A stretch of 64,000 nucleotides of DNA from the NCBI GenBank assembly GCA_977030845.1, contig OZ365114.1:20460001-20524000 (forward strand), in the 5' to 3' direction. Shown here one piece after another: positions 25,784 through 57,956 of the stretch (the first letter of the stretch is position 1; every line of letters begins with the position of its first letter). This DNA comes from Fimbriosthenelais zetlandica. Taxonomy: Eukaryota. A model generated the notes under the pieces. It saw only the letters and a program-made list of their open reading frames with translations. It was not told where the DNA came from and did no database searches. Position numbers and translations under genes: made by a program.

Positions 25784-26818
25784 ATGGTGGATGTTAACCA
25801 GATTACCTCCAGCATTGGACACGCCTATAACAATGACTACCTCATAGACGGGGTTACTTTTGGACCCCCTTTCCCTAAAGAAACAGTAAAGAAAGCAGCG
25901 AGCTTTCCCTTCACATCACAGGACATATTACTGGTTTCCTTCCCACGTTCAGGAGAGGACTTTCTATCAGATATTGTCTGGCTTTTAATGAATGAAGCTG
26001 ACACCTTTGGTGCCCGCAATATTCCGAGCACGGATCGCCTTCCTCTAATGGAACTTGAAGGAATTCACGGCTATGAGAGCCCGGTTGAATGTTTAATGGG
26101 TCGAGGCAGTCCCAGGCTGATGCGAACCCATCTTCCCTATAGCCTTATAGGGGGCGCCATTGAGAAAGGTCATCCTAAGGTCATCTGTGTGCTTCGTGAT
26201 CCAAGAGAAGTTGTCGTATCGCAGTATCGGTCCTATATGCAGTGGCCTGGACGAAATGTTCCATCATTTGATTATTTTTTCAACCAGTTTTTCAAAATGA
26301 GAAATGTTCTCTTCGGTTGTTATTTCCAGCACGTTCTTGGTTATTGGAAGAAGAGAAAGGACCCCAACTTTCTTGTAATTAAATACGAAGACCTCAGGAC
26401 GGATATTGAAGATAGTATCTTGAAAATTGCCCATTTTCTTATGATGGATCTGAAGCCTAAGCCAATGCATACGATAGTGAAGTATATGTTGAAGCACGAG
26501 GATGCACGACCAAATGGCAATGCTAGAATCCCCATGTATGTCAATGCCATCACTAAAGTGGAGACTTACAAAAGCGACTGTTACGAGACTGCCTCTGATT
26601 ATGAAAATACCTCAAAAGATGAAAACAAACCGTCGGATTCTTCAGAATCTCAAGAAGAAATGATGAAGAAAAAGAACATCATGGATTCCAATCCAGCAGC
26701 GCCCTTAGAGGTGGTGATAGTTTGTGAACCGAAACTGGTGGAAATGTCTGAAACACAGGCACGTATTGTGGATAAACTCTGCCAGTACCATCTGAAAGCC
26801 ACTGGCCTCAACTACTGA
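25784..26818 (+). CDS. Cytosolic sulfotransferase (SULT) family homologue, 344 aa, single coding exon, degenerate cofactor-binding motifs
   Basis: DILLVSFPRSG (5'-PSB-like), RLMRTHLPY (catalytic His), KVICVLRDPREVVVS (3'-PB), FGCYFQHVLGYW and FLVIKYEDL...ILKIAHFL are typical SULT segments. Confidence 0.85.
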   Translation: MVDVNQITSSIGHAYNNDYLIDGVTFGPPFPKETVKKAASFPFTSQDILLVSFPRSGEDFLSDIVWLLMNEADTFGARNIPSTDRLPLMELEGIHGYESPVECLMGRGSPRLMRTHLPYSLIGGAIEKGHPKVICVLRDPREVVVSQYRSYMQWPGRNVPSFDYFFNQFFKMRNVLFGCYFQHVLGYWKKRKDPNFLVIKYEDLRTDIEDSILKIAHFLMMDLKPKPMHTIVKYMLKHEDARPNGNARIPMYVNAITKVETYKSDCYETASDYENTSKDENKPSDSSESQEEMMKKKNIMDSNPAAPLEVVIVCEPKLVEMSETQARIVDKLCQYHLKATGLNY

Positions 26819-39546: not shown

Positions 39547-41882
39547 GTCAGGAGGGAAAGGTCGTTAATCTCATTTGTAAATACTGTAATGTAAATATGA
39601 AATGTTATTCAAGAAGACATGTCAAACTGTTAGCCAAGAGATGATCCAAAGTCATGCCTGGTCGCCTGGATGTACACAGAGAGGATTAAATAATCTTCTA
39701 CAATAGGATCACAGATACTAATATTTATTCTCTTCAATAGGCGAATGTTAAGTGTCCTATGTAGGTCTAACAGTTAATTATAGGTCCGTTAGATATATGT
39801 ACATGTATTTTTGTAGTCTTCTAAATGCAGACAGGCAAAGGCAGATTCATAAGATGCATACTGCTGATAGAAATGACAATATGTGCCATAAAAATGTCCT
39901 TATTTATGCACAGTCTGATGAAATTTAGTTCCATATAATATTATTTATTAGTTAATTACTATGTACATATTTGTGTAGATAGGCTTTTAACTATCCTAAG
40001 ATTTCAAAATTAACACAATCATCTTATAATATAGGTGCTACTATGGGTGTGTTTTATAGCAAAGAAACATTTGATGTTGATGCTTAAAGTATGGGTAATG
40101 CATTTTTATACTGGAGATCGGAAAGTTGAATCCAATTTACGATAGTTTCTCTCACGTATTATTAAATTATAGTTCTCCGAGGATAATATTTTGCTTTCCT
40201 GAATGCATATCTCCAACAGACTTGTATTAAATCATCTGTAGACTGTAGTTCAGAATCTCAGTCATGTCAATTATTGATAGTACCATGCAGATCAGGAAAA
40301 CTCATGTACAGTACACATCATTTCAAATAACATAAATGTCATTGGTATAGGGCAGGACGATTGTTGTAAAATGAACAGCAGTGTGAGAATTCTGTTAGTC
40401 AGATTAAAATTTAACATGTATCCAATAAATATCTAATATTTTGTATTTCATTGTTGCTAGTTTAATCTTAAAAATTGTATGCTTTTATAAAACAGGTCTG
40501 GGACATCTTTATAGAACTCTTGTAAGTAGTATAGGAAAATGCAAGTGATCATCAGGTGTATAAATGAGGGAAGGAGAGGAGGAGAATGGAATGAGGGAAA
40601 TAAGATGTGAGGCTGACAGAGTCCGGCGTCTTGTCAACCTATATTTTATCATTAACAGTTAGATGGAAATCCCTGTCAGGTTCATGACTTGTTTAACACT
40701 GTATCTAGGTTATTGTCTCATGGAGAGCAGTCTATACTTCTCTGCACTCTTGAGACTATATGGTCATCTCCCTTGACATGATAATGTCAACCAGGTCATT
40801 ATCTAGCAATAAACTGAGGAGTTTTATCACGGATATGACAGCTTCTCTATGGAGATATGGTTTTAATGAAGATGTCAGGATGTGCACCTTCATCAACTGT
40901 CGTACTTTACTTGCCAATAATTGAAATTAACGACATGATTATAGGTCATGCGGGATGTCGTAAAACCACCTCGCTGAGACTTTGAATCGTTTTCTCAGTG
41001 AGATCTGCCCTGATGAATATTAATCAGTGCCTTGGGCAAGGAATGTCTGAACTCACATGTGTTACTGATCAGCCATGTGAATCACTCAAACATCCTGTTT
41101 CTCTTCTCGCCATATTTTGACAGATGTGGGAGCCATGTACGAGCTGAATGTAGACTACTGATTCACCTGTCAGTGGAAAGATCTCCCATGTTTGATTACT
41201 AATTAATGATTCTTGAGTGGATCTGTATTGGGTAGACTGACAATTAGTGACCATTGATCCCTTCCTGAGGCTGTCATAAGTCTCAGTTCGTGATGAATGT
41301 AGAATTAAATTTAAACCTTTTCTGTTTGAATGTCACCCTGTGTATAGTGGAAAATGGATAATCCCTGGATAAAGGAGTATCTTGTCTTTTGTGAAGATTG
41401 ACCAAGTATCATTTTTTTACGGCAAGTTATTAGAATTCTTATATCTATTTCTATAATTCTAAGCTTTCGCTATGATTCTAGATAAAGACTTTTAGGTTAT
41501 ATGTTTATATGATACTGATAATAAACAAGCAAGACATGAATATTATAGGTGAAAAAGGCACTATATACAGACTTTATTTCCCTCAGAAAAACAAACAATG
41601 TGAAGTTTTTGGAGTTCTGGATGGATTGGTCCTCTCTTGTGTGTAATGTAATGCATGAATATCATGTTAAATTCCTTCCTTGATTAGGCTAGTTTTACTG
41701 AGGTCGTCGCTTGATTACACAATCTGTTTGGAGTATAAAAGATTTGTATTAATTTACTGTTAACTATTCGGTGGGTTAGAAATGTATTTTAAGGAGATAA
41801 CTGTTCACAAACATCTGGAGACCAAATGAAATTAGATATTATGCAATGAACATTCGTAATTATCGAAATGAATCCTTACCTT

Positions 41883-42838
41883 TTAATGTGAGCGCTTGTT
41901 TAGTTCATAACTGAAGCCATAGTCATATTTGGGTCCATCTCCTCTGGGCACATTACCATGTGGATCGTAGTGGCTTGGGTGGTTATGACCATGACTACCA
42001 TGACTACCGTGACTACCATGCTGAGAATAGGGCTGGTAGCTTGGTGCGCTGATATAGCTGTTACCAAAACGATTATTATGATGACCACCATATCCAGCAT
42101 TACCATAACCATCATTATGTCCACCATAGGAGGCAGCAGCATGGCCATGGCCGTAGCTGTTCTGATGACCATGGCTACGGACACCAATCACACCGAGTGG
42201 ACTACCGGGAACTCCATCTTTGCGGGCAGTTCCAGTACCTGTTCCATACCATTGAGCATTCTTGTTAACGGCCAATTGGCGACGGGCGTTGTTGGCATGT
42301 ACAGAAGACTCAAATCCACTGAAAAGTTAGGAATATTGAATTATTAAATTGAGTTAAATTACAAAGTAACTACCTGGGAATGTGTGAACTTCCATATGCA
42401 AATATTCCTACAGAAGTTTATGTGACAAGTTTACCGATTTCTCCTCAGGCGCCTACTTAAAATTCAGCAAAATATAATTTGATATGTACTGGATATCAGG
42501 AGCAGATTTCCCTTTCCTTAAAAAGTATATTTCAAATATATTTTTGGTAGCGTATATCGCCCGTGAATCTTAGTGGATTTCAATATGGTATTTCTTCTCC
42601 ATAGACCTTTTGAATTTCAGAGGGGAAGTCGCTATACAATATAGAAAACTAGCCAGTCTTGTTGATCAGAATACCGAAAAGAATCCTGGAAAAAAAATGA
42701 AGTGTAGAATAAAACCTACTCGTGTGGTTCAGCATGTTTCTGTCCATAATATCCACCATGTTGTCCATTCCATCCATGACCGGATGGAGCTGTAAAGCAC
42801 ACAGGCAGAATAGCCAGAAGAACAAGTGTAGTAACCAT
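41883..42838 (-). CDS. Secreted Gly/His/Tyr/Ser-rich low-complexity protein (paralogue A), 184 aa, complement(join(41883..42318,42720..42838))
   Basis: Signal peptide MVTTLVLLAILPVCFTA, phase-2 intron (GA|gtaggt ... ttttcag|T), shared 38-aa motif with paralogue B, (SHG)n repeats. Confidence 0.85.
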
Positions 42839-42979
42839 TGTGTCTGTGATGTGCAGGACTTTAAGTGACGTGATATGTGTAAAAGGTCCAAACGTAAAGG
42901 ATCCTCCAAGTCTTCACTCTCTACAAGTTGAATGTGTGGATGAGGAAGAGATACTGAGGAGTGTGGACATTGACGGGCC

Positions 42980-42986
42980 TTTTATA
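42980..42986 (-). promoter_or_regulatory. TATA box of paralogue A
   Basis: TATAAAA 31 nt upstream of an initiator-like TCAGT (+1 near 42955), followed by an ATG-free leader to the start codon. Confidence 0.7.
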
Positions 42987-45900
42987 GGCAGACACAGGTC
43001 CGACTGTCCAGCCATCCTTCAATAGGAATTTAAGGTGTATGGGCACACCTCCCCCAGGCTTCGTGCACGCAGGCCTACCGTTAATGATTGGGTTGTATAA
43101 CAGATCCGTTGTGCATGTCTCCCATGCTATGCATTATTCATGTCAAATCATGTCAACGGGACTGGAGAGACGAGAGGTCAGTTTGACCAGTAGCATGACA
43201 CTTCATCACCAATACAGGGCAATTGATTTATTGACAAATGTCCTAATGGTCCTCTAAATAGATTGGAATTTCTATTGGCAATATCCCTATCAAAAGTTGA
43301 TATCATTTATTGGAAATTTGTTACTCGTGATCGACATTTACACATGGGTCATGTCATAGGGCCATTATTTGTCATGGCTTCAATTATCGAGGAATTATTA
43401 ATGACAGTCCTCTTGATGTGAACTGGGAAAATAGTCTCGGTTAGTTAGGCTACTCATGAAGTTACGAAAATTAATTATTAGAATAGCATGGCTGCATTAA
43501 CTTTTCATGAATGCCAAGCCTGTATGGCTGTGTATACCAAGCATTTTTCTCACAAGGCAAAACTTGAAATTCTGCCAGATATATTTGTCTTCAATATAAA
43601 TCCTTCGATATATAATCAATATAAAAAAGTAATTAATTCATGCAAGTGTAATTAACCAGGGGAATTATTGCCTGCTGTTCAATTTGATAACATTATAGGT
43701 TATTTATAATCATGGGCCTATTATAAAAACAGACAATGATGTTCAGAGCACGAGGTCGTCACTCTAGATAGAGGAAGTTGCCGGGTCAAGGACAACTTGA
43801 ACTTTGAGATTGCCATAGTAACTAATAAAACATTCTGTTCGAGTTCACTGGTTACCAGGAAGTTAACGAATGGATTTCTTGGAACTCACATATTATGATT
43901 TGTGTCCTTAGAAAGTAGATTTTTAGAGGGCGACCCTTTTACTTTTATTCTTATTTCTCTAATGGACTTGAGAGACGATTTAAGTATGTGAGGAATTCAC
44001 CAGTGATTTTAATCGTCTCTTAAGCAGGCAGACCCATCATGGAAAGTAAATCAGTGCATATAGATTGCCCCCAATCAGTTCATACCGGTACTTACTAATA
44101 ATGTAACAAGGCCTATAGGCCTAAAGATGTATAACACATGCATTATGGTCTACTGTATTTTAATTAAACTGACACGAAGACTCCTGCCAGCTCTAGGCCC
44201 TACGGGGTTTAGGGTGAGGGCCTCAGTCAAATCCCTATATTTCATAGATCATGAAGCTCAAATAACAAGGTGCTTTAATCTCGTTAGTGTAGCCTACACG
44301 AAGCTTTAACAACAAAGAAATCATAGAATGCAGCAACCCCAGAAAAACCATTTTAAGGTACATGTCAAATGTAAACTTTAGGGCCTACTAATTATGAAAA
44401 AATGATCTGGGAGAGCACTATGGGATTTGCTTGCCGTGTAACGTTAGCCTACTAAAGGCCTATGGCCTTCCAAACCTGGGATAAATGTGTTCTTGTACAA
44501 TAGACATTAATTGTCCATCAATCAAATAGGAGTTAAGATAAACAGTAAGCATAATATATATATATAATGTAGCATACTAAAGCTTGAATTCAGAGGTCTA
44601 TATTATATTGATGATTTATTATAAGGGTACATAGGCTAGGTCACATTATGCGGAAGTAGACGTGATGGGACATTCAGAGATGTCAATGACCTTCAACATC
44701 TCGCCCCATGAATCATAGAGGGCGCGTCAATTCAGGTCTCGCCGCAATGAATTACCTAACTCTGTCGATCATAATGTGAAGTCCTGATTTGTTTATGATA
44801 ATCATTAAGATATCTTTTATTTAGATGAATTTTGATGAGACTTATTTATTTAGAGAGGCATTAGAAGAGATTTAATCAAACTATACCCAGGAACATGTCT
44901 TAATTGATAATAATTATCTTTAATTAAAAATTAAAAGTACATTTAAAATAACAGTAGGGCCTAGGCCTATAGTAGTAGATACTAAAGGGTCAGTATAGGT
45001 GCTACCAAGGCAAGAACCGATTAACTTCAGTTTCTTTTTCCAATTAGTCAATAGTGTATTTTAACAAAAGAAAAATTACTAATACAATATTATGGTTATT
45101 GTAGCTAATACAATAGTATGTTTATTGACGTTTCTTTTGAAGGCATGTACAATTATATTGTATATTAAACTATATATATCCTGTTAATTGGATTTTCAAT
45201 GTTATAATTGCTTCGTATATTATGAGAAAGGTCGTGACAGGTGAATATGCCCTCCCATTAAATCAAACGTCTCTCATCAACCTTTAACATGTCATTAGCC
45301 TATGTATGCACTTTGACAGGTATATATTTTTATTTATGATAAAAAGGTTATATAAACAGATCGGCTTTATGTACTTAACAAAGACCAGGAACACACCTTA
45401 GGATGTTGACCTGCTGGTGTTCTGTCTCACGCCCCCGAGTTCTCATGAGTAACACAACAGTATATATTAAAGTGATGAATCGTTTATAGACTTTCATAAG
45501 AATTACATATCAATCTACAAGCAGGCCTATCCTATCCTATGTCATGTTCCTTCATTAATTTTGCTGGCCTATCCCATAATAGCTTCAACAGTGATCAATG
45601 TAGTTGTATGGGTTTACATATTGACTTTATACATTGTATACATGTACATGGGTTTTCATTTCAATTACACTTTAATTTCATTTAATATTAATTTAAGATG
45701 ATTATTATAATTTTAATGTGTCCAAACAAAGCATGATAAACCAGCACATATCTATTTGACATATACGACCAAACCCCATCTCCTGTCTATTTCCGAAACC
45801 CATTAATCACTGACATGACACTGTCAGGGTTTTCTGAGATTGACAATTAATGGGACTGGGCTGTGGAAATAAACATTAAAGTACTCTAAATGACGAAGTT

Positions 45901-47396
45901 CAAAACGAAGGCAATTTAACAAATTATTTTATTGGTTTAGCGGAATTCCTTCACACAACATAGACACATTTTCATCATGCATATTGGCTGTCATATTTGA
46001 CGTATATTGCAAGAATATGACTAAATTTGATAATAAAATGTATTTTGATGTAGAATTAATATTTGATATGCTTTATGGAGAGTCCTGATCGGACCAATAA
46101 GCTAAAAGAATGAATCTACAGCAGACTGCATTTTAAATGGAAATAATTTAGCAGATTCTCAAGCATACACCTTGTTGTTTAATGTCAGTTAGTACATGGA
46201 CATCATTAAACCCATAATACAGTGTGGCATTAATGAATGGGACCTAGTATGGCACAGTAAAGAAAGCAAAAGCTAAAAATATTGGGCTACAGCATCATAA
46301 CATTTTAAATACATCTTTGAATGGAATATAAAAAGCAATATGTGCACGGGGATACAGTTTTGAAGATACTGTCATAAATACCATTTTAGTGTCTGAAGGA
46401 CTACTGGGTTCCATGACCCCTGGATCTGTAGAGTACTGTCTGGGGTCTCCTCCTTTATCTCACAAAAAGTGTTACCAAAATCACAGAATGATTCATAATG
46501 TTTCTCATCTCCATGTAAAGTTTTCAGAGGTTCTGATAATAGTTTAACTTTCGAACAGTTACTGTAGGCCTATAGTACAAAGAACTTGAAAATTCAGAGT
46601 GTAAGAGTGTCCTTATATTTGGTGGATATAATCCTATATGCAGTCTCTATGGAGAATGACTAAATGGCACTTTGTAAGAAAGAACAGATGTCTGACGATG
46701 AACGATCCTTTCACTTGCTTATTGCTGGTATTGAACGAAGATAATACATATCGATATTAATTCTGAAAACATGGCTACATTTGATTTTTTCACTGCTTTT
46801 TCATATGTGATATAGCCATAATAATTGATTTCATTTTTTGGTGATTCATATTTCCACCTGTTTGATTATATAGAAAGAGGTGGATTCCACTTTCTGTGTA
46901 CTGTTGATAACACTTACTGTAAGATTGTCCTATGTGAGACATTCGTCAAATGAATAGACCTACTGTATTTCAAGCTTCATAAATAGATGCACATAATATT
47001 CAACATAGCAGTCACTCTGCCAGCGAGCATGGATTGCAGTGTGTATAATGATCTCTGTATGGTTATCATACTGTCGTCAATGTCCTTTGTTGAACACATC
47101 GGATACTGTTTTCTCATCTGAACTACATAGGCCTAAATATTATTTTCGCAATTTTCATTGTGTAATACTTCATTGGTGATTGAGAGCCTAGACTATAAAG
47201 CAGGAACTCATGTTCTGCAAGAAAAAACCAACAGAATTGGATAATTTAATATTAGAAGTGAGTTTGTAAAACTGATAGGAAATCACACTACTTTTCAAAT
47301 GTAATAACTACTTTTTAATCGTAATTCTTTAAGGGTTTAATAGGGAATTTGCAGATGAATGAAACTCACCTGTCTGAAGGTAAGACCCCTCTCTGT

Positions 47397-49303
47397 TTAA
47401 TAACGGCCATAGCCATGGATGGCAACTGGAACCAAGTATTGCATTTGAAGGAGAGACCCTCTCCTTCCACTCCCATACGACTGCTTATAATTTTGGTAAG
47501 TCTTGTCAGGCACTCGGTAGGACTTTTTGGGAGGCTCTATCCGAGGCTGTGGTAGAGGTCCTTCAGAATGCAGAGGTTCCTCTTTGTAACTAGATTCTTC
47601 ATACTTGGGTTCCTCATACTTGTGTTCGCCATGCTTCGGATCTTCATACCTGGGTTCCTCGTATTTTGGCTCCTCATAGGGTACTTGTTGAGTTTCTTCT
47701 TGTTTAGCATTAGGAGAGTTGAAGGATGCTGGTTTTGGCTCAGCAGGGAAAGGCTTTTCCCCATATGAAGTTGGCTCATTCTTGCCAAGGCGTGACATCA
47801 CCTTCACCTAGAGCAGAATAAAAGGTTTCTAAAACTTAAAATTCTTCAGAGCGTTTGGCAATTGCAATGAAATGTGTTCAAAGAGACCAAAAGCATTTCT
47901 ACAAGTGCCATCACCCCCGCCCCCAACCCCAAAAAGGCAATCAAAAACAGGAAAGACTTACATAGTGCTCATGTACGCTGTTGTCATAACCAAAGAGCTT
48001 TGCCTGGGTATCAAAGAAGTCTGGTTCCGTGTCATAGCCAAATAATTGAAGGTAGTTACTGGCAGATTTAGCATGAGGCCTTCGTGAATGTGGTGCAGGG
48101 GGTGCGTGTGGTGCAGGGGGTGAATGTGGTGCAGGGGCTGCATGAGGTGCAGGGGGTGCTGGACGTGATGCAGGTGCAGGATGTGCAGCTGGGCGATGAT
48201 TCTGGTAGACTCTGAGGAAGGCATTGGTTCCAGGATAGCTTTGCCTATGAGCATGACCCGAGTATGCTGCTCCAGAAGGGTAGACCTGATGGCCATGTGG
48301 TGCCTTGAAGGCAGCATATAGGGCAGGGGCCCGGTAAGGGGTGGCATGATAACGTGTGGCAGGAAAAGCATAACTTGCTCGAGCAGTATACACAGCTGGG
48401 GTGGGATAAACAGGAGTCGGTACAACACCATAGTGAGCTGGTGGGGCAGGTGGTCCATAGCTGGCAGTAGGGACAGGATGGTGGGCAGGGGGTGGTCTGG
48501 CATCATGCGTGGCCCCACCATTGGCATGGATGGCAGTGCCCTGAGGTGGGCCTTTCCTGGGCCGAGAAAAACGTGTCCCAGGTACCCCATCAAAATGGGC
48601 AGTGCCAGTGCCTGTACCTATACTTGCTGCTAATTTGTTCACGGCCATCTGTCTTGCAGCATTTATTTGGTGGATGAGTTGCTCATTGTAACTAAAAAGA
48701 GAGAAAACATGAAAAAACAGACGGATGGTATTCAAAAGATATTCACTGGTCACATACACTATACTTCACAAGTGAAAATGACTTTTACTGTTTCAGATTA
48801 TGATGAAATATGAATGGAATTCAGACTATTTATGGCACTTTTGGACAGCTAGCACTTTTATATTATGGGAGTAACTGCATGCTGCTCTCAGTGTACACCC
48901 ACATGACAACCACTCCTACAGTTTTAAGTGCATTATAAACCTGGCTGTAGAAATGTAAGGATCATTGCAATGCAGTTCCAATGGATAAAAACTATTGAAT
49001 GTATGAGTAATACACAAAATTCTAGCAAATGAATATATCACGCTTTGAGTATTGAGCAACAAAAGGGACCCCATTATAGATTGCTCATGCATGGAGGTGC
49101 TCTTACGTTGGTACATTTTGGTTAATAGGTGGTTGCCAAGATATGTTCTGGATTTCATTTTTCTAGGTTTACAATTGATTTCTATCGACTTCTTAACTAT
49201 TAAACAAGTGGATGACTTACGATGGTGCAAGGGCCACAGCCTGTGAATGTGCCGCTTCAACTGCCAGGACAGGCACCATGGCCAAAAATATGAGGCTCAG
49301 CAT
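47397..49303 (-). CDS. Secreted Pro/Ala/His/Tyr-rich protein with acidic YEEPK-repeat tail (paralogue B), 407 aa, complement(join(47397..47807,47962..48691,49221..49303))
   Basis: Signal peptide MLSLIFLAMVPVLAVEA, phase-2 then phase-0 GT-AG introns, shared 38-aa motif with paralogue A, PAPH and YEEPK repeats. Confidence 0.85.
48086..48157 (-). repeat. Coding minisatellite, 4 x 18 nt (PAPHAA/PAPHSP-type hexapeptides)
   Basis: Four adjacent units of consensus gaatgtggtgcagggggt on the + strand. Confidence 0.85.
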
Positions 49304-49439
49304 TGTGATAGTCCTTCTAGGAATTGAATAAAACGTAAAACGCCCACTAATTCAAGTCTCAATCCCTGTTATATTGGACACTCCCATCCAGCACGTCGTC
49401 CTCCAACTAAAATAATACCACCGGATGTCGAGGATGGCG

Positions 49440-49446
49440 TTTTATA
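49440..49446 (-). promoter_or_regulatory. TATA box of paralogue B
   Basis: TATAAAA about 140 nt upstream of the ATG, at a similar spacing to paralogue A. Confidence 0.6.
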
Positions 49447-51485
49447 AAGGAGTAAAAGTCGTCTGTCACCCTGACGAACATAAACGACACATTTTGACAG
49501 GAGAATAAAGTTTTGGTTCAATTGCTGAAAGTCGTAATTGTCTAACAAAATTGCAGCATGGCGATTGATCTCTGCCTAGTTTCCGGTCACCTTACATTCC
49601 CTCCCGAGTTGTACCAAAGGAGAATAACAGTTAATTTGAACTAGTTAAAAAGTGAAACCATTAAATAAATGAAATTAAAATGTTAGGCTATCGACCATTC
49701 AGGATATGGATGTCAAAGATGTTATCTTTGGCGTTCTTTTTTCTTTAACGAGAGGACAATAGATATCTCTAGTTCGACATAGATTTTCGATTCAGATTTT
49801 TTTTAACATGATGCCATAGATCTATTGATTTAATATCTGCATGCCGGAAAACATGACTGAGATGATGTTCCCCACATTCCCACACAATCAGGGATCTGTA
49901 CCAATTAAAAATGGATTCATTGTATTTTGAATGACAACCATTCCGGATTAGGCCTACTTCTTTCAAAATGACATATCAATAAAAATGATCAGAGGAGAAA
50001 TATGTCCGAGATAAATCATTTTTAAGTGAGTGAACAAACATATGGATCTTTTGAAAACCTACTCATTGTAGAAAATGTCCAGATTAATTCAAATAAAAAA
50101 AATATATATATAATTGAAACTAGTTTAACCAAATTTATGTTCAGATGTAGAACATAAATGATATGGTATACACTAGGCCTCTACAATACATTGTCCACGA
50201 CTTGCAATTAATAGAGAGTAGGGGCCTATACCCATCCATTCCATGCCATTACTAATGTGTTTAATTGCCACGTGTTAAGTTTATTTGACATCCTATACTC
50301 TCTGTTATTGAATTTATGGCCTTTGCCACGCGCGGAAATATCCATTTAAGAGGCTTGATCGATATTAATCTAATCATATATCAAAAGTTATACCTCAGTT
50401 TTCCGAAGTTAATGATAGATTGTTGGTACGTGAGTAGAAGATCTATACGATTGATATACATTTTATCCAATCATATTAGTTAGCTTCATTATCATATTGG
50501 CTGATCACACTCATATGACCATGAATGATTCATGTCTTAAATCCAAGCAGCATCTAAACATTGCTTATCCAAGTCTAAAATATTTGCTATAAAGGATTGA
50601 GATCAGTCTTTCGATAGTCTGAATTAAACATTCTACTTCGAGATAGATGGACATGATCTGGCCTTAATTCTTATCAATTCTCGTTTAACATTCCTCTGAC
50701 AGAATAGGCCTATCAAAATTAATTATCTAATACCTTATGTTCAGTGGTGGTCCAGGAACCCTGCAATTGATGGATTGAGAAGTGTTGTTCAAGAAGAAAT
50801 CATCCCATCTTTTTCCCATAAAAATTTAGCAAATTATTCGTGCCTGCACTTTTGCCATTGATGGGAAGGCCCCCGGCCTACTGCCATCAATTAATACATT
50901 GACAGGCTCAATGGGGAGTATCCTGTACAGTCCACGTGTCCAGTCTGGATCTGATGGTAAAATATCGATGTCCAGGGGTGTAGGATAGCCAGGATTTTTA
51001 GACATCAAGAAAGCCTTTGACATTCTCCATCAGGATAGGCTATATTCTTTTAAGCAAAATGGTGGTGCTATATCTCAAGGTTAAATTTGTTCTAAAATTA
51101 ATGTAGCAGGTATTAGGCCCTATAGCCTATGTTATAGGCCTAGGTCTATATTATACAGACATTCATAATTAATAATCTGAAAATGGTGCATGTGCATGTT
51201 CCATATACATTGTATAGACCTAAGCTTGTTCCATTTCGCCTCAGATCATTGATTTCTGTTTCTATTTTCTATGAACATTCATATTAAGTGAAGGAAGTAG
51301 CATCTACTCCTGCATCCAGCAGCGTTCCCCATGTGTTGCCTAGCGACCGAACCGTCCTTGACCTGCACGGAAGTCAAAAGGAGCAGGTTAGATGATCTGA
51401 CTGATGTTGAGCCTGCCTGAGCAGCGAGTCACTCCCCCAATCACTCTCCTACACGCACCCCAATGTAGGCCTACCTGTAGCTGGG

Positions 51486-52318: not shown

Positions 52319-53764
52319 ATGGAGAGATGCATTCCTTCCATCTTATTCCTCTTCCTCGTCTATTTTCCAATATCTTCCGTTTCGCGTGGAGACCTGACTG
52401 GCAGGGGATCTGCTGCCAATGGAGAGGCCACATCAAGCCAGCTGCTGGTTTATAATGAAGCTAGACGGCAGGTGGTGCTACACCAGGCCACATTAGATAA
52501 ACTAGCCTCCCTCCCTGGTCCCCTCCATGTCATCACGGCCATCGGTGACGCCAGGATTGGCAAATCAACTGCCTTCAACGTCATGGCCGCCATGCTGATG
52601 AGCAAAGACAAGAAAGGCAAGATCAGTTCAGTCCCTTCACTCTTCAGCGTTTGTCAGAGCCTTGAGACTTGCACGAAAGGAGTATGGGTGCACACTTTGC
52701 CTTTACAGGAGGGAGGGCACTTAGTCATGCTAGATGTGGAGGGGACAGACCTTGGCAGAGACATGATCACAACGCAATTCAGCCTTCTTACTTCTTTGCT
52801 ATCATCTGACGTCCTTGTATTTTTGAAAGAATCCTTTCCAAAGAGGACTGGGATATTCCTCCATGAACTGGCTAGGTTGAAGGACCGACTACAGGCACAT
52901 TCAGACCAGGTGCCTTCTGACCAGGCACTTTATGTGATCATTAGAGATCCATTAAAACCACCCCAGGATGTCTCCCTCAAGACTTATGTCACCCAAGTAC
53001 TGAGTGACCCCACCATCTGTATTGATGTGGTTGATGACTCTGAGTGTAGATTACTGGGGAAACATTACCCACTGAGTCAGGTCAATGTCTACTCCATGCC
53101 TTACGTCAGTCGCAGGCATCAGAAATCTTTCGAGTGGGCCCTGAAGGACAAGACATATTTAAAAACAGTGGCATCTCTAACTTTTGAGATCAAAAACCAC
53201 ATTGATGTATCTGTTGGCACTGAAACTACAGGCATGGTCTTTGCTGGGATTGTTAGAACTTTCATACAGACGTTAGTTCAATCAGAAAGTCAAACCAACG
53301 GCCCAGCAGTGGATACGAGTGAGCAAGAACCCAATAGATGCCAAATGACCACACCTGACCCAGACCAAGAAACAGAACTGTTAGACGTTGAATCCATGTC
53401 CACGGAAGATATGGATGAGTCGTCATCGCGGGTAGATGAACCACTGAAAGTGGGATCTCTAGAAGTAGAAAAAATCATCAAATCTCCATTTGAAACAATG
53501 GGACCTGGAGTGTATAGCTTCGTAATGAACAATGTGCTGAGAATGAAACCCTCACCACAACCAAGTCAAGCTCAGGGGAAGAAGAAGTGGAACAGAGAGG
53601 AGGAGGATGATGATGAAGATTGCAGGGGTGGTGTAGGTAGTGGATGTGATAAATCAGCTAGTGGTCAGACCAGAATGACCAAATGGGGTAAAGCTATACA
53701 CGAGTTCATAGATGATATATCAGATGCTCTGGATGATTTTTTCAGCAGTGTCCTTGCTGAGTGA
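52319..53764 (+). CDS. Guanylate-binding protein/atlastin-family large GTPase domain protein with N-terminal signal peptide-like segment, 481 aa, single coding exon
   Basis: G1 GDARIGKS (with the GBP-type Arg), G2 CTKGVW, G3 LDVEG, G4 IIRD; hydrophobic N-terminus MERCIPSILFLFLVYFPISSVS; acidic C-terminal tail. Confidence 0.87.
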   Translation: MERCIPSILFLFLVYFPISSVSRGDLTGRGSAANGEATSSQLLVYNEARRQVVLHQATLDKLASLPGPLHVITAIGDARIGKSTAFNVMAAMLMSKDKKGKISSVPSLFSVCQSLETCTKGVWVHTLPLQEGGHLVMLDVEGTDLGRDMITTQFSLLTSLLSSDVLVFLKESFPKRTGIFLHELARLKDRLQAHSDQVPSDQALYVIIRDPLKPPQDVSLKTYVTQVLSDPTICIDVVDDSECRLLGKHYPLSQVNVYSMPYVSRRHQKSFEWALKDKTYLKTVASLTFEIKNHIDVSVGTETTGMVFAGIVRTFIQTLVQSESQTNGPAVDTSEQEPNRCQMTTPDPDQETELLDVESMSTEDMDESSSRVDEPLKVGSLEVEKIIKSPFETMGPGVYSFVMNNVLRMKPSPQPSQAQGKKKWNREEEDDDEDCRGGVGSGCDKSASGQTRMTKWGKAIHEFIDDISDALDDFFSSVLAE

Positions 53765-55965: not shown

Positions 55966-57956
55966 CTAAGGATTGTTGTTGGTATCGACCAGTAGATGTC
56001 TAGGGAAGCTAAGTGGGGCACTTATAACACAGTGGACATTTTCAGGATAGGGCGGCAGTTCCTCCACCTCCAATGTTACCACATTCTGTCTCTTACATCG
56101 AAAATCCTTCTCATCCTCAACAAAACTGATAAAATAGACCCAGGGTGGGTTGACTGCTGGCCGGGCCACCCCAGCCAGCGAGCCAGCCGGGGCCACTATC
56201 TTAGTCCATTCATTAGTTATTTGATTATAACATTCTATACTTTTATTACAGCGGTCTACAGCATATATATTGCCAGTGACTGATAACATAACATGGCCGG
56301 CATGAGGTAGTAACATGGGTGACTTGTCCTCCCATGTGTCTGATCCAGGATCATAGGACCACACAGTCATCACTGTTTCATCTTCAGTTCTTCCACCTGA
56401 CACATATATCTTCCCTTCATGTTCACAAGCAGATGCTGATTTCCTAGGTTGAGGTAGAGGCGCTATAGACTTCCATTCATTCTGATCTACACTATACACT
56501 TCACACTTGTCTGTGGGGGGATGGTCTATGCTCAGGTCTAAAGGACTGCCTCCTCCAAAGGCGTATAATTTTTGATTGAAGGCCACGAGTGGGAATGATT
56601 GTCTACGGGTTGCCATGCGGGCTATTCTCGTCCAGGTGCCTGTACGAGGATCAAATCTCTGACAGGTGGCCCTGGCATGTGCCGGTCTACCCATCCCACC
56701 ACACACATACAGAAAGTTATCCATCACCACCACGGCTGCGTACAGAAAGTTAGTATCCGCACTGTCCAGTTGTAACCAGCGACCGTCATGTAGAGCGAAC
56801 ACTTTATTACAGTTATGTTTATATCCAATATGAAGCCCGTAGCGGCCACCAAGGGCCACCATACATGGCTCATTCCTCACTTGTGTCCGAGCATTCTGCA
56901 TGACGGGGTGTCTACTGGGTAAGACATGGTAATGTAACGCCTCGTCCAGGAAAGCTCGACACTTGGGATCCGACATCACATAAGTTTGAGAAACCTGATC
57001 TACAAGTTCCTCTGGCTTCATCATGGCAAAACGGATGTGTTCAAAAACTTCAGACACATTAAGACTCCTCTCTGTGCGGTCGTAATCCACCCAGCGTACC
57101 ACATGGTGGAAGAGGTCCAGCTCGCACGACACATTCAACCGACTGCTCTGAAGGATGGCTCGCAGATGCTCTCGATGCATCTTCATAAACTGATCTGAGT
57201 CGACAATCTTGTCAAAGTGTTCTATCACAAAATCCAAGGCCGAGTCCTTCACTCCAACAAGGGCGAAGGTCTCGGCTATATTCAGAATATCAATACAGGT
57301 CTTGTAATGGATTTCACTGATGAGGAATTGACAGCAGAGCTGAATGGCTGAACTCATTTGGAGGTGGCAGGCTCCAGCCAGTGCCTCCATGATGTCTTCT
57401 AGGTTGAGACGGAGCCTCCCTGTGTAGGCAAAGTCCAGTAATATACTCATAGCATTGGCCGTCACACCCTTCAACTCCACATGGTCCTGCCGGGCCTCCA
57501 TCATCGAACCTGAAATTAAGAGTTCAATAGTTAATCAACATGCTGCAGCAGATCCAGACGAAATTCAACACAGATATTAGAGTTTATTTAAAATATATGA
57601 GCTGGTTTCTATCTAAATTAAAACAGAACAGAGAGTCAATGTTAGAGATAGTTTGTGGAAAATATTCATTAAAATAGTGGTCTTTAAACTAAAGTGTCAC
57701 CCTTGAGAGACAGGTACCACTTACCAGTGAGCATGGCTCTGAAGTAATCGCTGACCGCTGCCAGTACAGTCCTGTGAGTGCTGAATGACTGGCCCTCAGC
57801 AATGACTGTGTAATCACACAGTAGTTCTCCATGGTAGAGCTGGCGGAGGGTGCTGAGGATAGCACTACTGTGACCAGGCGAGGTGAGGGTACGGTGAGAT
57901 GGAGGGGTTCCCTCCGGGGTGTGGAGCCGCTTGACTGAGCCATTGTCAGAGGCCAT
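55966..57956 (-). CDS. KLHL26: BTB-BACK-Kelch protein, KLHL26-like, 591 aa, complement(join(55966..57509,57725..57956))
   Basis: BTB (HRTVLAAVSDYFRAMLTG|SMMEARQDHVELKGV), BACK (CELDLFHHVVRWV, HIRFAMM) and Kelch repeats with GG motifs; the phase-1 intron after RAMLTG is at the position I recall for KLHL26. Paralogue assignment is from recall. Confidence 0.85.

What the first reader, a model, noticed from the sequence alone, without database searches (positions are those of the whole stretch)
41883..49303. Tandem pair of secreted structural proteins sharing an unrecognised 38-aa motif (candidate new family)
Seen: two minus-strand genes with the same layout (TATA box, cacaATG start, signal-peptide exon, phase-2 intron). 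Each second exon opens with an ungapped motif, GFESSVHANNARRQLAVNKNAQWYGTGTGTARKDGVPG (42317..42204) versus YNEQLIHQINAARQMAVNKLAASIGTGTGTAHFDGVPG (48690..48577), with 23 of 38 residues identical by hand count. The tails are completely different low-complexity sequences: Gly/His/Tyr in A, and Pro/Ala/His/Tyr plus acidic YEEPK repeats in B. I do not recognise the motif. Established: His/Gly/Tyr-rich secreted proteins build metal- or DOPA-crosslinked invertebrate materials such as jaws, beaks, adhesives and skeletal matrices. Inference: a modular biomaterial system with a conserved assembly or processing module and interchangeable tails.
Basis: partly seen in the sequence, partly recalled or inferred. 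Interest (0 to 1): 0.72.

Follow-up and report, generated by a model that had tools for sequence, protein, structure and literature searches.

The report
Undescribed annelid secreted structural-protein family
Two neighbouring worm genes share a short, strongly conserved N-terminal motif that defines an undescribed family of secreted glycine/tyrosine/histidine-rich proteins (23 motif copies in this genome, more than 130 sequence clusters in public data, including Capitella), most likely building blocks of an extracellular material, though no function has been tested.

Summary
Both minus-strand genes have a TATA box, a cacaATG start, a signal-peptide exon and a phase-2 intron. Each second exon opens with a 38-aa motif, 23/38 identical (BLASTP E 2e-11), followed by unrelated low-complexity tails.

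The pair is not isolated:
- A motif profile finds 23 copies in this 447-Mb genome, mostly in tandem clusters. Twenty loci were modelled; a signal-peptide exon plus phase-2 intron was found in 19, and no model was found for L024.
- An exhaustive HMMER search finds 135 cluster representatives, of which two are bacterial repeat noise. The only named ones, among 30 looked up, are uncharacterised Capitella teleta proteins.
- A flanking Kelch gene is closest, among named proteins, to the annelid Paralvinella.
- Pfam, PDB and paper searches give nothing.

Against orthologues in a related species the motif is nearly frozen (dN 0.01-0.06) while the tails diverge (dN about 0.4) and synonymous sites are saturated. 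Fifteen positions are at least 80% conserved family-wide. AlphaFold2 gives a helix plus a disordered Gly-rich loop.

Best reading: an undescribed annelid family of secreted matrix proteins, with a shared docking or processing motif and variable material tails. This is analogous to arthropod cuticle protein families but not homologous to them. Tissue, expression of these two genes and biochemical role remain untested.

The parts
42981..42986 (-). Gene A TATA box (TATAAA), 148 nt upstream of the ATG
   Evidence: the orthologous contig L001 also has TATAAAG upstream of its ATG
42720..42838 (-). Gene A exon 1 (CDS part): cacaATG, hydrophobic signal-like N-terminus MVTTLVLLAILPVCFTA, short Gly/His/Tyr spacer, GTAGGT donor in phase 2
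   Evidence: the donor phase is conserved in L001
42204..42317 (-). Gene A 38-aa family motif (GFESSVHANNARRQLAVNKNAQWYGTGTGTARKDGVPG)
   Evidence: 37/38 identical in the orthologue, dN 0.012
41883..42318 (-). Gene A exon 2: motif plus Gly/His/Ser/Tyr-rich tail and stop codon. A GTAAGG donor 3 nt after the stop suggests a 3'-UTR intron
   Evidence: orthologue P0001/L001 is 56% identical overall
49441..49446 (-). Gene B TATA box (TATAAA), 143 nt upstream of the ATG
49221..49303 (-). Gene B exon 1 (CDS part): cacaATG, signal-like MLSLIFLAMVPVLAVEA, GTAAGT donor in phase 2
48577..48690 (-). Gene B 38-aa family motif (YNEQLIHQINAARQMAVNKLAASIGTGTGTAHFDGVPG)
   Evidence: 35/38 identical in orthologue L003, dN 0.06
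47962..48691 (-). Gene B exon 2: motif, Pro/Ala/His/Tyr-rich tail, and a conserved block at its end (KSAS..FGYD.EP.FF..AKLFGYDNS.xEHY) before a GTAAGT donor in phase 0
   Evidence: orthologue P0002/L003 is 46% identical, and similarity stops exactly at the donor
47397..47807 (-). Gene B exon 3 (inferred): acidic Tyr/Glu/Pro/Lys repeats (YEEPK type), ending ...HGYGRY plus stop
   Evidence: ctctag acceptor and a 136-codon in-frame ORF. A C-terminal Tyr or His is usual among the family loci inspected. No RNA or orthologue support

Best explanation
A and B are real, tandemly duplicated genes of an undescribed family of secreted, Cys-free, low-complexity proteins. The family is found in annelids: this worm, a related species, Capitella teleta, and many unlabelled marine eukaryote contigs and metatranscripts.

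The family layout is: signal peptide, short spacer, a conserved motif of about 30-40 aa, then a variable Gly/Tyr/His-rich tail. In B the tail is Pro/Ala/His-rich plus an acidic block.

The motif is a predicted helix whose conserved residues N10, R13, Q14, V17, N18 and A21 fall on one face. It is followed by a Gly-rich loop, G-[AST]-[GS]-x-G-T-A, and then x3-G-V-P-G-[T].

Shown: gene structures, family membership, the size and clustering of the family, selective constraint on the motif, and absence from Pfam and PDB.

Inferred: the proteins are extracellular matrix components of a non-mineralised annelid material such as chaetae, cuticle, tube lining or a similar sclerotised structure. The invariant motif docks every paralogue to one common partner, either a scaffold such as chitin or a shared sorting or modifying machinery. 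The tails set the material properties through His-metal coordination, Tyr/DOPA cross-linking and charge. This works like arthropod cuticular protein families, which combine a conserved short motif with low-complexity tails, but there is no homology to them.
For: - Gene models and motif identity.
- Family in this genome: 23 motif copies in five loci. Of 20 loci modelled, 19 gave a signal-peptide exon followed by a phase-2 intron before the motif exon; no model was found for L024. The motif-bearing ORFs show Gly/Tyr/His tails. Near-identical tandem arrays of 7 and 9 motif copies suggest a demand for high dosage.
- Public data: 135 representatives at E<=1e-3, 22 at E<=1e-10, two of them bacterial repeat noise. 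Named members are only Capitella 'hypothetical proteins'.
- In 28 of 133 hits a signal-like N-terminus and the motif lie in one ORF. Their tails are Gly 25, Tyr 21, His 7, Cys 0.1 %. Several hits come from the MERC collection, which I take, from my own knowledge, to be marine metatranscriptomes; if so, family members are transcribed elsewhere.
- Constraint: motif dN 0.012 and 0.06 against tail dN 0.375 and 0.41, with synonymous sites saturated. Fifteen motif positions are at least 80% conserved over 131 sequences.
- AlphaFold2 predicts a helix over residues 3-23 at pLDDT 64-71, with the rest disordered.
- No Pfam or PDB match.
- Language-model neighbours of the Capitella member are arthropod cuticle protein clusters, all at scores below 0.9, so this is a lead only.
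- Host taxon: the flanking Kelch gene is 58% identical to Paralvinella palmiformis, its best named hit.
Against: - No expression, tissue or proteomic evidence exists for A, B or any family member in this species; no sequencing run could be listed.
- The motif is not confidently folded (mean pLDDT 53.7).
- No linkage to chitin synthase or tyrosinase genes was found.
- The conserved helix face is polar (N, R, Q, N), with aromatic positions only about 50% conserved. This is not what known chitin-binding motifs look like.
- Small secreted Gly/Tyr/His-rich proteins can also be antimicrobial.
- The taxonomic range is known from only 30 of 135 clusters looked up.
- B exon 3 is unverified.
Confidence: 0.55

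Rival explanations
1. The motif is a pro-region or sorting tag rather than part of the final material. It directs packing of glue or tube precursor proteins into regulated secretory granules, or recruits a modifying enzyme such as a tyrosinase, peroxidase or prolyl hydroxylase acting at GVPG. It is then cleaved off or becomes irrelevant after secretion.
For: The motif always sits at the N-terminus of the mature protein, about 33 residues after the Met. The same motif precedes quite different tails. Several subfamilies have basic sites just after it: GVPGT-x-VRK in the C21 30.4-Mb cluster and RPRK in B. Many relatives have a [YF]xPGF[KR] mini-motif before it. It is disordered outside one helix.
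Against: Basic sites after the motif are not universal; many relatives continue GVPGTG-x-x-FGYGYG. Pro-regions are rarely conserved at 15 positions across more than 130 clusters. There are no data on processing.
Confidence: 0.2
2. The family consists of epidermal defence peptides. These would be Gly/Tyr/His-rich antimicrobial proteins encoded in tandem clusters, like the nematode NLP/CNC peptides or arthropod glycine-rich antimicrobial proteins, not structural components.
For: Most members are small (about 100-190 aa), secreted, cationic and Gly/Tyr/His-rich, and they lie in rapidly duplicating tandem arrays. A nematode-specific peptide cluster appears among the distant language-model neighbours. 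An earlier follow-up on another Gly/His/Tyr locus of this genome also left defence open.
Against: B is 407 aa, with a Pro/Ala-rich block and an acidic block, which is unlike an antimicrobial peptide. The invariant N-terminal motif has no parallel in those peptide families. Near-identical arrays of 7 and 9 motif copies fit bulk production. No induction or activity data exist.
Confidence: 0.15
3. The similarity is chance, or the two ORFs are not genes.
For: None beyond the absence of RNA evidence.
Against: The pairwise E-value is 2e-11. Orthologues of both genes exist in a second species with conserved splice sites and a near-invariant motif despite saturated synonymous change. There are 23 motif copies in this genome and more than 130 public clusters.
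Confidence: 0.01

Closest known systems
Arthropod cuticular protein families (Rebers-Riddiford CPR / Chitin_bind_4, and the low-complexity CPLC, CPF, Cuticle_3 and Retinin-type families)
   Same: Signal peptide, one short conserved motif, Gly/Tyr/His/Ala-rich low-complexity tails, almost no Cys, and many paralogues in tandem clusters. Language-model neighbours of the Capitella member are such clusters at scores of 0.78-0.89, which is a lead only.
   Different: No sequence homology: Pfam finds no Chitin_bind_4, Cuticle_3 or Retinin_C match in any member scanned. The phylum differs (Annelida). The conserved face of the motif is polar rather than aromatic. Chitin binding is untested.
Sabellariid tube-cement proteins (Pc-1/Pc-2/Pc-4/Pc-5, Sa-1/Sa-2/Sa-5)
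   Same: Annelid secreted basic proteins rich in Gly, Tyr and His, as described in PMC12621633. Mature A has pI 9.1, Gly 20, His 13 and Tyr 8 %.
   Different: A and B have no decapeptide tandem repeats of the Pc-1/Pc-2 type. None of the 30 public clusters looked up carries a cement-protein name. The cement sequences themselves were not available for alignment. The family also occurs in Capitella.
Nereidid jaw protein Nvjp-1 / Nai11527
   Same: Annelid secreted, disordered, Gly- and His-rich structural proteins whose His residues coordinate Zn (PMC13120676 and PMC11090348).
   Different: Nvjp-1 has about 27 mol% His and is 381 aa. The A tail has 15% His, and B has 6%. No 381-aa protein appears among the motif hits.
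Elastin-like GVPG / VPGVG repeat proteins
   Same: The tetrapeptide GVPG is invariant in the motif.
   Different: It occurs once per motif, not as a tandem repeat, and there are no elastin-like domains.

Membership tests
The new motif family itself (profiles A2 and A3 built here) | Core signature N-x2-R-Q-x2-V-N-x2-A-x3-G-[AST]-[GS]-x-G-T-A-x3-G-V-P-G | tested here: met
   A and B carry every conserved position. They score 67.6 and 67.5 bits (E about 3e-16) against the 131-sequence profile.
The new motif family itself | Gene layout: signal-peptide exon, phase-2 intron, and the motif at the start of exon 2 | tested here: met
   Found for A, B and 17 further loci of this genome, 19 of the 20 loci modelled; no model was found for L024. 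Also seen in the A orthologue L001.
The new motif family itself | Cys-free Gly/Tyr/His-rich tail ending in Tyr or His | tested here: inconclusive
   A meets it (Gly 20, His 15, Tyr 10 %, ends ...RSH). B departs: its tail is Pro/Ala/His/Tyr-rich with an acidic exon 3, though it also ends in ...GRY.
Arthropod CPR cuticle proteins (Pfam PF00379 Chitin_bind_4) | Match to the Rebers-Riddiford chitin-binding consensus | tested here: not met
   No Pfam hit at E<=10 for the A and B exons or at E<=1 for 10 full-length relatives.
Arthropod low-complexity cuticle families (PF11018 Cuticle_3, PF04527 Retinin_C, PF22861) | Match to the family HMM | tested here: not met
   No Pfam hits. The only link is language-model likeness below 0.9.
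Sabellariid cement proteins Pc/Sa-1, -2 | Basic Gly/Tyr-rich tandem peptide repeats, expression in parathoracic cement glands, DOPA | not testable with these tools
   Composition is partly alike and no such tandem repeats are seen. The cement sequences, tissue expression and modifications were not available.
Nvjp-1-type jaw proteins | About 27 mol% His and 36 mol% Gly; presence in jaws; Zn binding | tested here: not met
   The composition criterion fails: mature A has Gly 20 and His 13 %, and B has His 6 %. Tissue and metal binding are not testable.
Elastin-like proteins | Tandem VPGVG / GVPG repeats | tested here: not met
   There is a single GVPG per motif.

The most novel reading that the evidence does not exclude
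The motif is the annelid counterpart of the arthropod Rebers-Riddiford consensus. It would be a previously unknown module that anchors a whole family of variable Gly/Tyr/His-rich proteins to beta-chitin, or to another common scaffold, and would thereby define the protein matrix of chaetae, cuticle or tube. The composition of that matrix is still essentially unknown at the sequence level.
Probability: 0.2. Interest if true: 0.8.

Novelty: new variant of a known kind. Interest (0 to 1): 0.55.

Why it matters
Annelid hard and tough materials such as chaetae, tube linings and jaws are models for bio-inspired materials, yet few of their proteins are known by sequence. A family-defining motif with 15 positions at least 80% conserved gives a search handle: profile A3 retrieves the family from any annelid genome or transcriptome. 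It also gives a concrete module to test for scaffold binding, self-assembly or processing. The family shows how one conserved N-terminal module is combined with freely evolving low-complexity tails. A and B are an extreme case, with Gly/His tails in one and Pro/Ala plus acidic tails in the other.

Tried and rejected
- Pfam scans of all A and B exons and of 10 relatives gave nothing above noise.
- PDB profile searches with A2 and A3 gave only chance GxGxxG-type hits, E >= 0.01.
- The ESM Atlas gave only compositional or cuticle-like neighbours below 0.9, and no structure match above TM 0.4.
- Sequencing-run look-ups for gene A (kinds any and rna): none was listed, so read laying was not used and there is no expression evidence (one search found the machine busy).
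- Complex prediction of the A motif with the B motif gave no verdict, so it is neither support nor evidence against binding.
- Linkage of family clusters to tyrosinase or chitin synthase genes: none. Those genes lie on other contigs, or on C25 far from any cluster.
- Paper searches found no mention of the motif. They covered the Capitella accessions, motif peptide strings, assembly accessions, and polychaete cement, chaetae and jaw proteins.
- The organisms behind the unlabelled ENA, Logan and NCBI contigs could not be established.
- Fold search was not run, because the model is low-confidence.
Full report
**1. Observation**

Reading 41500-49800 on the minus strand and splicing the pieces gives two genes.

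- Gene A has a TATAAA 148 nt upstream of a cacaATG start. Exon 1 is 42838-42720 (MVTTLVLLAILPVCFTA... plus a short Gly/His/Tyr spacer) and ends in a GTAGGT donor in phase 2. A 401-nt intron follows. Exon 2 is 42318-41883. The protein is 184 aa.
- Gene B has a TATAAA 143 nt upstream of a cacaATG start. Exon 1 is 49303-49221 with a GTAAGT donor in phase 2, followed by a 529-nt intron. Exon 2 is 48691-47962 and ends in a phase-0 GTAAGT donor, followed by a 154-nt intron. Exon 3 is 47807-47397. The protein is 407 aa.
- BLASTP gives E = 2e-11 for that stretch, and nothing else in the two proteins aligns.
Neither mature protein contains Cys.
- Only these two copies lie in the window.

**2. The pair belongs to a large family**

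A profile of the motif from A, B and their two orthologues (A1) was run over the window's own 447-Mb assembly. It found 23 significant motif copies, and the deeper profile A3 found the same 23. They lie as follows:

- the two in this window (C21, 20.50 Mb);
- three hits at C21, 19.69 Mb;
- seven at C21, 30.38-30.40 Mb;
- nine at C13, 7.72-7.74 Mb;
- two at C23, 1.05 Mb;
- one at C19, 40.57 Mb.

Twenty loci were modelled. In 19 the motif opens an exon preceded by a phase-2 intron and a signal-peptide exon of the MIKIALLAALLGVAFA type; no model was found for L024. The motif-bearing ORFs show a Gly/Tyr/His-rich tail, for example GYGSHNQGYG repeats, and most end in Tyr or His. The C13 and C21 30-Mb arrays hold near-identical copies 2-3 kb apart.

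Within this genome A and B are each other's closest relatives. Their motif identity is 56%, against 44-46% to the other members. They share GTGTGTA and DGVPG where the others have GAGTGTA and YGVPG.

**3. Relatives elsewhere**

The word-indexed search found one orthologue for each gene, both from the same two Logan runs. P0001 is 56% identical to A, and P0002 is 46% identical to B.

- The A orthologue contig keeps the TATA box, the phase-2 donor, the acceptor, and a donor 3 nt after the stop codon.
- The B orthologue keeps the acceptor, and its similarity to B ends exactly at the exon-2 donor.

An exhaustive HMMER search of 1.84 billion cluster representatives with a 15-sequence motif profile (A2) gave 135 hits at E<=1e-3 and 22 at E<=1e-10. 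Two of the 135 are bacterial repeat proteins and count as noise.

- Of 30 clusters looked up, the only named ones are Capitella teleta hypothetical proteins: CAPTEDRAFT_223880, _216377, _199363, _203213 and _224505.
- The rest come from Logan, ENA, JGI, NCBI and MERC records without organism names. I take MERC, from my own knowledge, to be marine metatranscriptome data.
- In 28 of 133 hits a signal-like N-terminus and the motif lie in one ORF. The motif starts a median of 33 residues after the Met, often after a [YF]xPGF[KR] mini-motif. The tails are Gly 25, Tyr 21, His 7 and Cys 0.1 %.

The intronless BTB-BACK-Kelch gene in the window has Paralvinella palmiformis (58%) as its best named relative, with molluscs at about 32%. 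The genome is therefore an annelid, possibly near Terebellida. This placement rests on one gene.

**4. Constraint and shape**

Against the orthologues, synonymous sites are saturated (pS 0.70-0.86).

| Region | dN in gene A | dN in gene B |
|---|---|---|
| Motif | 0.012 | 0.06 |
| Tail | 0.375 | 0.41 |

The tails also carry many insertions and deletions.

Over 131 sequences the following positions are at least 80% conserved: N10, R13, Q14, V17, N18, A21, G25, G27, G29, T30, A31 and G35-V-P-G38. Q14, A21 and G29 are invariant.

AlphaFold2 with that alignment predicts a helix over residues 3-23 at pLDDT 64-71. The Gly-rich loop and everything after it are disordered, and mean pLDDT is 53.7. The conserved helix residues have i, i+3, i+4, i+7, i+8, i+11 spacing, so they lie on one mostly polar face. 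That is my reading.

**5. What it is not**

- Pfam gives no hit for the A and B exons or for ten full-length relatives.
- PDB profile searches give only chance glycine-loop hits.
- No paper in the library contains the Capitella accessions or motif peptides.
- Papers on sabellariid cement, Alvinella tubes, chaetogenesis and nereidid jaw proteins give no link.
- None of the 30 clusters looked up carries a cement or jaw protein name, and no 381-aa protein (the length of Nvjp-1) is among the hits. The cement and jaw sequences themselves could not be aligned here.

**6. Mechanism**

Shown:
- two expressed-looking, selectively constrained genes for proteins with signal-like N-termini;
- a family-wide invariant N-terminal module;
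- free evolution of the low-complexity tails;
- tandem amplification of the family.

Inferred, at roughly 0.55:
- The products are extracellular matrix components of a non-mineralised annelid material.
- The motif docks every paralogue to one common partner, either a scaffold or shared sorting or modifying machinery.
- The tails supply His-metal, Tyr/DOPA and charge chemistry.

The best analogy is the arthropod cuticular protein families. This is a resemblance in how the proteins appear to work; the homology tests failed (see the membership table).

Rivals:
- a pro-region or sorting tag that is removed after secretion (0.2);
- Gly/Tyr/His-rich defence peptides (0.15);
- chance or non-genes (about 0.01).

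Which material is involved cannot be decided. Presence in Capitella and in records I take to be plankton metatranscriptomes suggests something common to annelids and their larvae, such as chaetae or cuticle, rather than a specialised glue. That is inference only.

**7. Limits**

- No sequencing run could be listed, so there is no expression or splice evidence for A and B. Read laying was not used.
- B exon 3 rests on splice signals, a 136-codon in-frame ORF and the family-typical C-terminal Tyr.
- The A+B complex job gave no verdict.
- No family cluster is linked to tyrosinase or chitin synthase genes.
- The taxonomic range beyond annelids is unknown.

**8. Verdict**

'New family' is supported and much enlarged. 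The biomaterial reading is plausible but untested.

This is a new, undescribed protein family of a familiar general kind, namely secreted low-complexity structural proteins with a conserved short motif. I score interest at about 0.55.

It may be another cluster of this family and should be rechecked with profile A3. I did not test that.

Noticed in passing
G000:C13:7716714-7738691 and G000:C21:30380394-30397625 (loci L009-L023): Two dense tandem arrays, with 9 and 7 motif copies spaced 2-3 kb apart, of near-identical family members (GYGAGYG and GYGSHNQGYG tails). Some loci show duplicated alternative signal exons upstream (L012, L013). This suggests recent amplification or homogenisation.
   Followed up: partly
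G000:C21:19695268-19695363 (L007:2024-2167) and G000:C23:1045393-1045494 (L008): Short ORFs carry only the second half of the motif (QVNRVAQHLGAGLGTAPVHGVPGTILNTYTASSVY plus stop). They lie a few hundred bases downstream of a full motif exon. The same short form exists in another species (P0083). It may be a conserved terminal exon with a half-motif or a separate mini-gene.
   Followed up: no
window 41876-41885 and L001:3432-3445: In gene A a GTAAGG donor lies 3 nt after the stop codon (TAA AAG|GTAAGG). The orthologue has the same arrangement (TGA AAG|GTAAAC). This suggests a conserved 3'-UTR intron specific to the A lineage. The other family members inspected lack it.
   Followed up: partly
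window 47962-48080 (end of B exon 2): A non-repetitive block, KSASNYLQLFGYDTEPDFFDTQAKLFGYDNSVHEHY, is conserved with the orthologue inside an otherwise fast-evolving tail. It is a possible second functional element of B.
   Followed up: no
window 25784-26818 (+): A single-exon 344-aa ORF with a Sulfotransfer_1 domain (E 1e-40).
   Followed up: no
window 55966-57504 (-): An intronless 512-aa BTB-BACK-Kelch gene. Unnamed relatives are 91%, 81% and 79% identical, Paralvinella palmiformis is 58%, and molluscs are about 32%. I used it to place the genome among annelids.
   Followed up: partly
window 52319-53764 (+): A 481-aa ORF with a marginal GBP N-terminal GTPase match of 20.7 bits, just under the Pfam cut-off of 21.1.
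   Followed up: no
public relatives P0018, P0029, P0045, P0051, P0070, P0085, P0087, P0117: Many relatives have a second small conserved element, [YF]xPGF[KR]x, between the signal peptide and the motif. A and B lack a clear copy of it.
   Followed up: no
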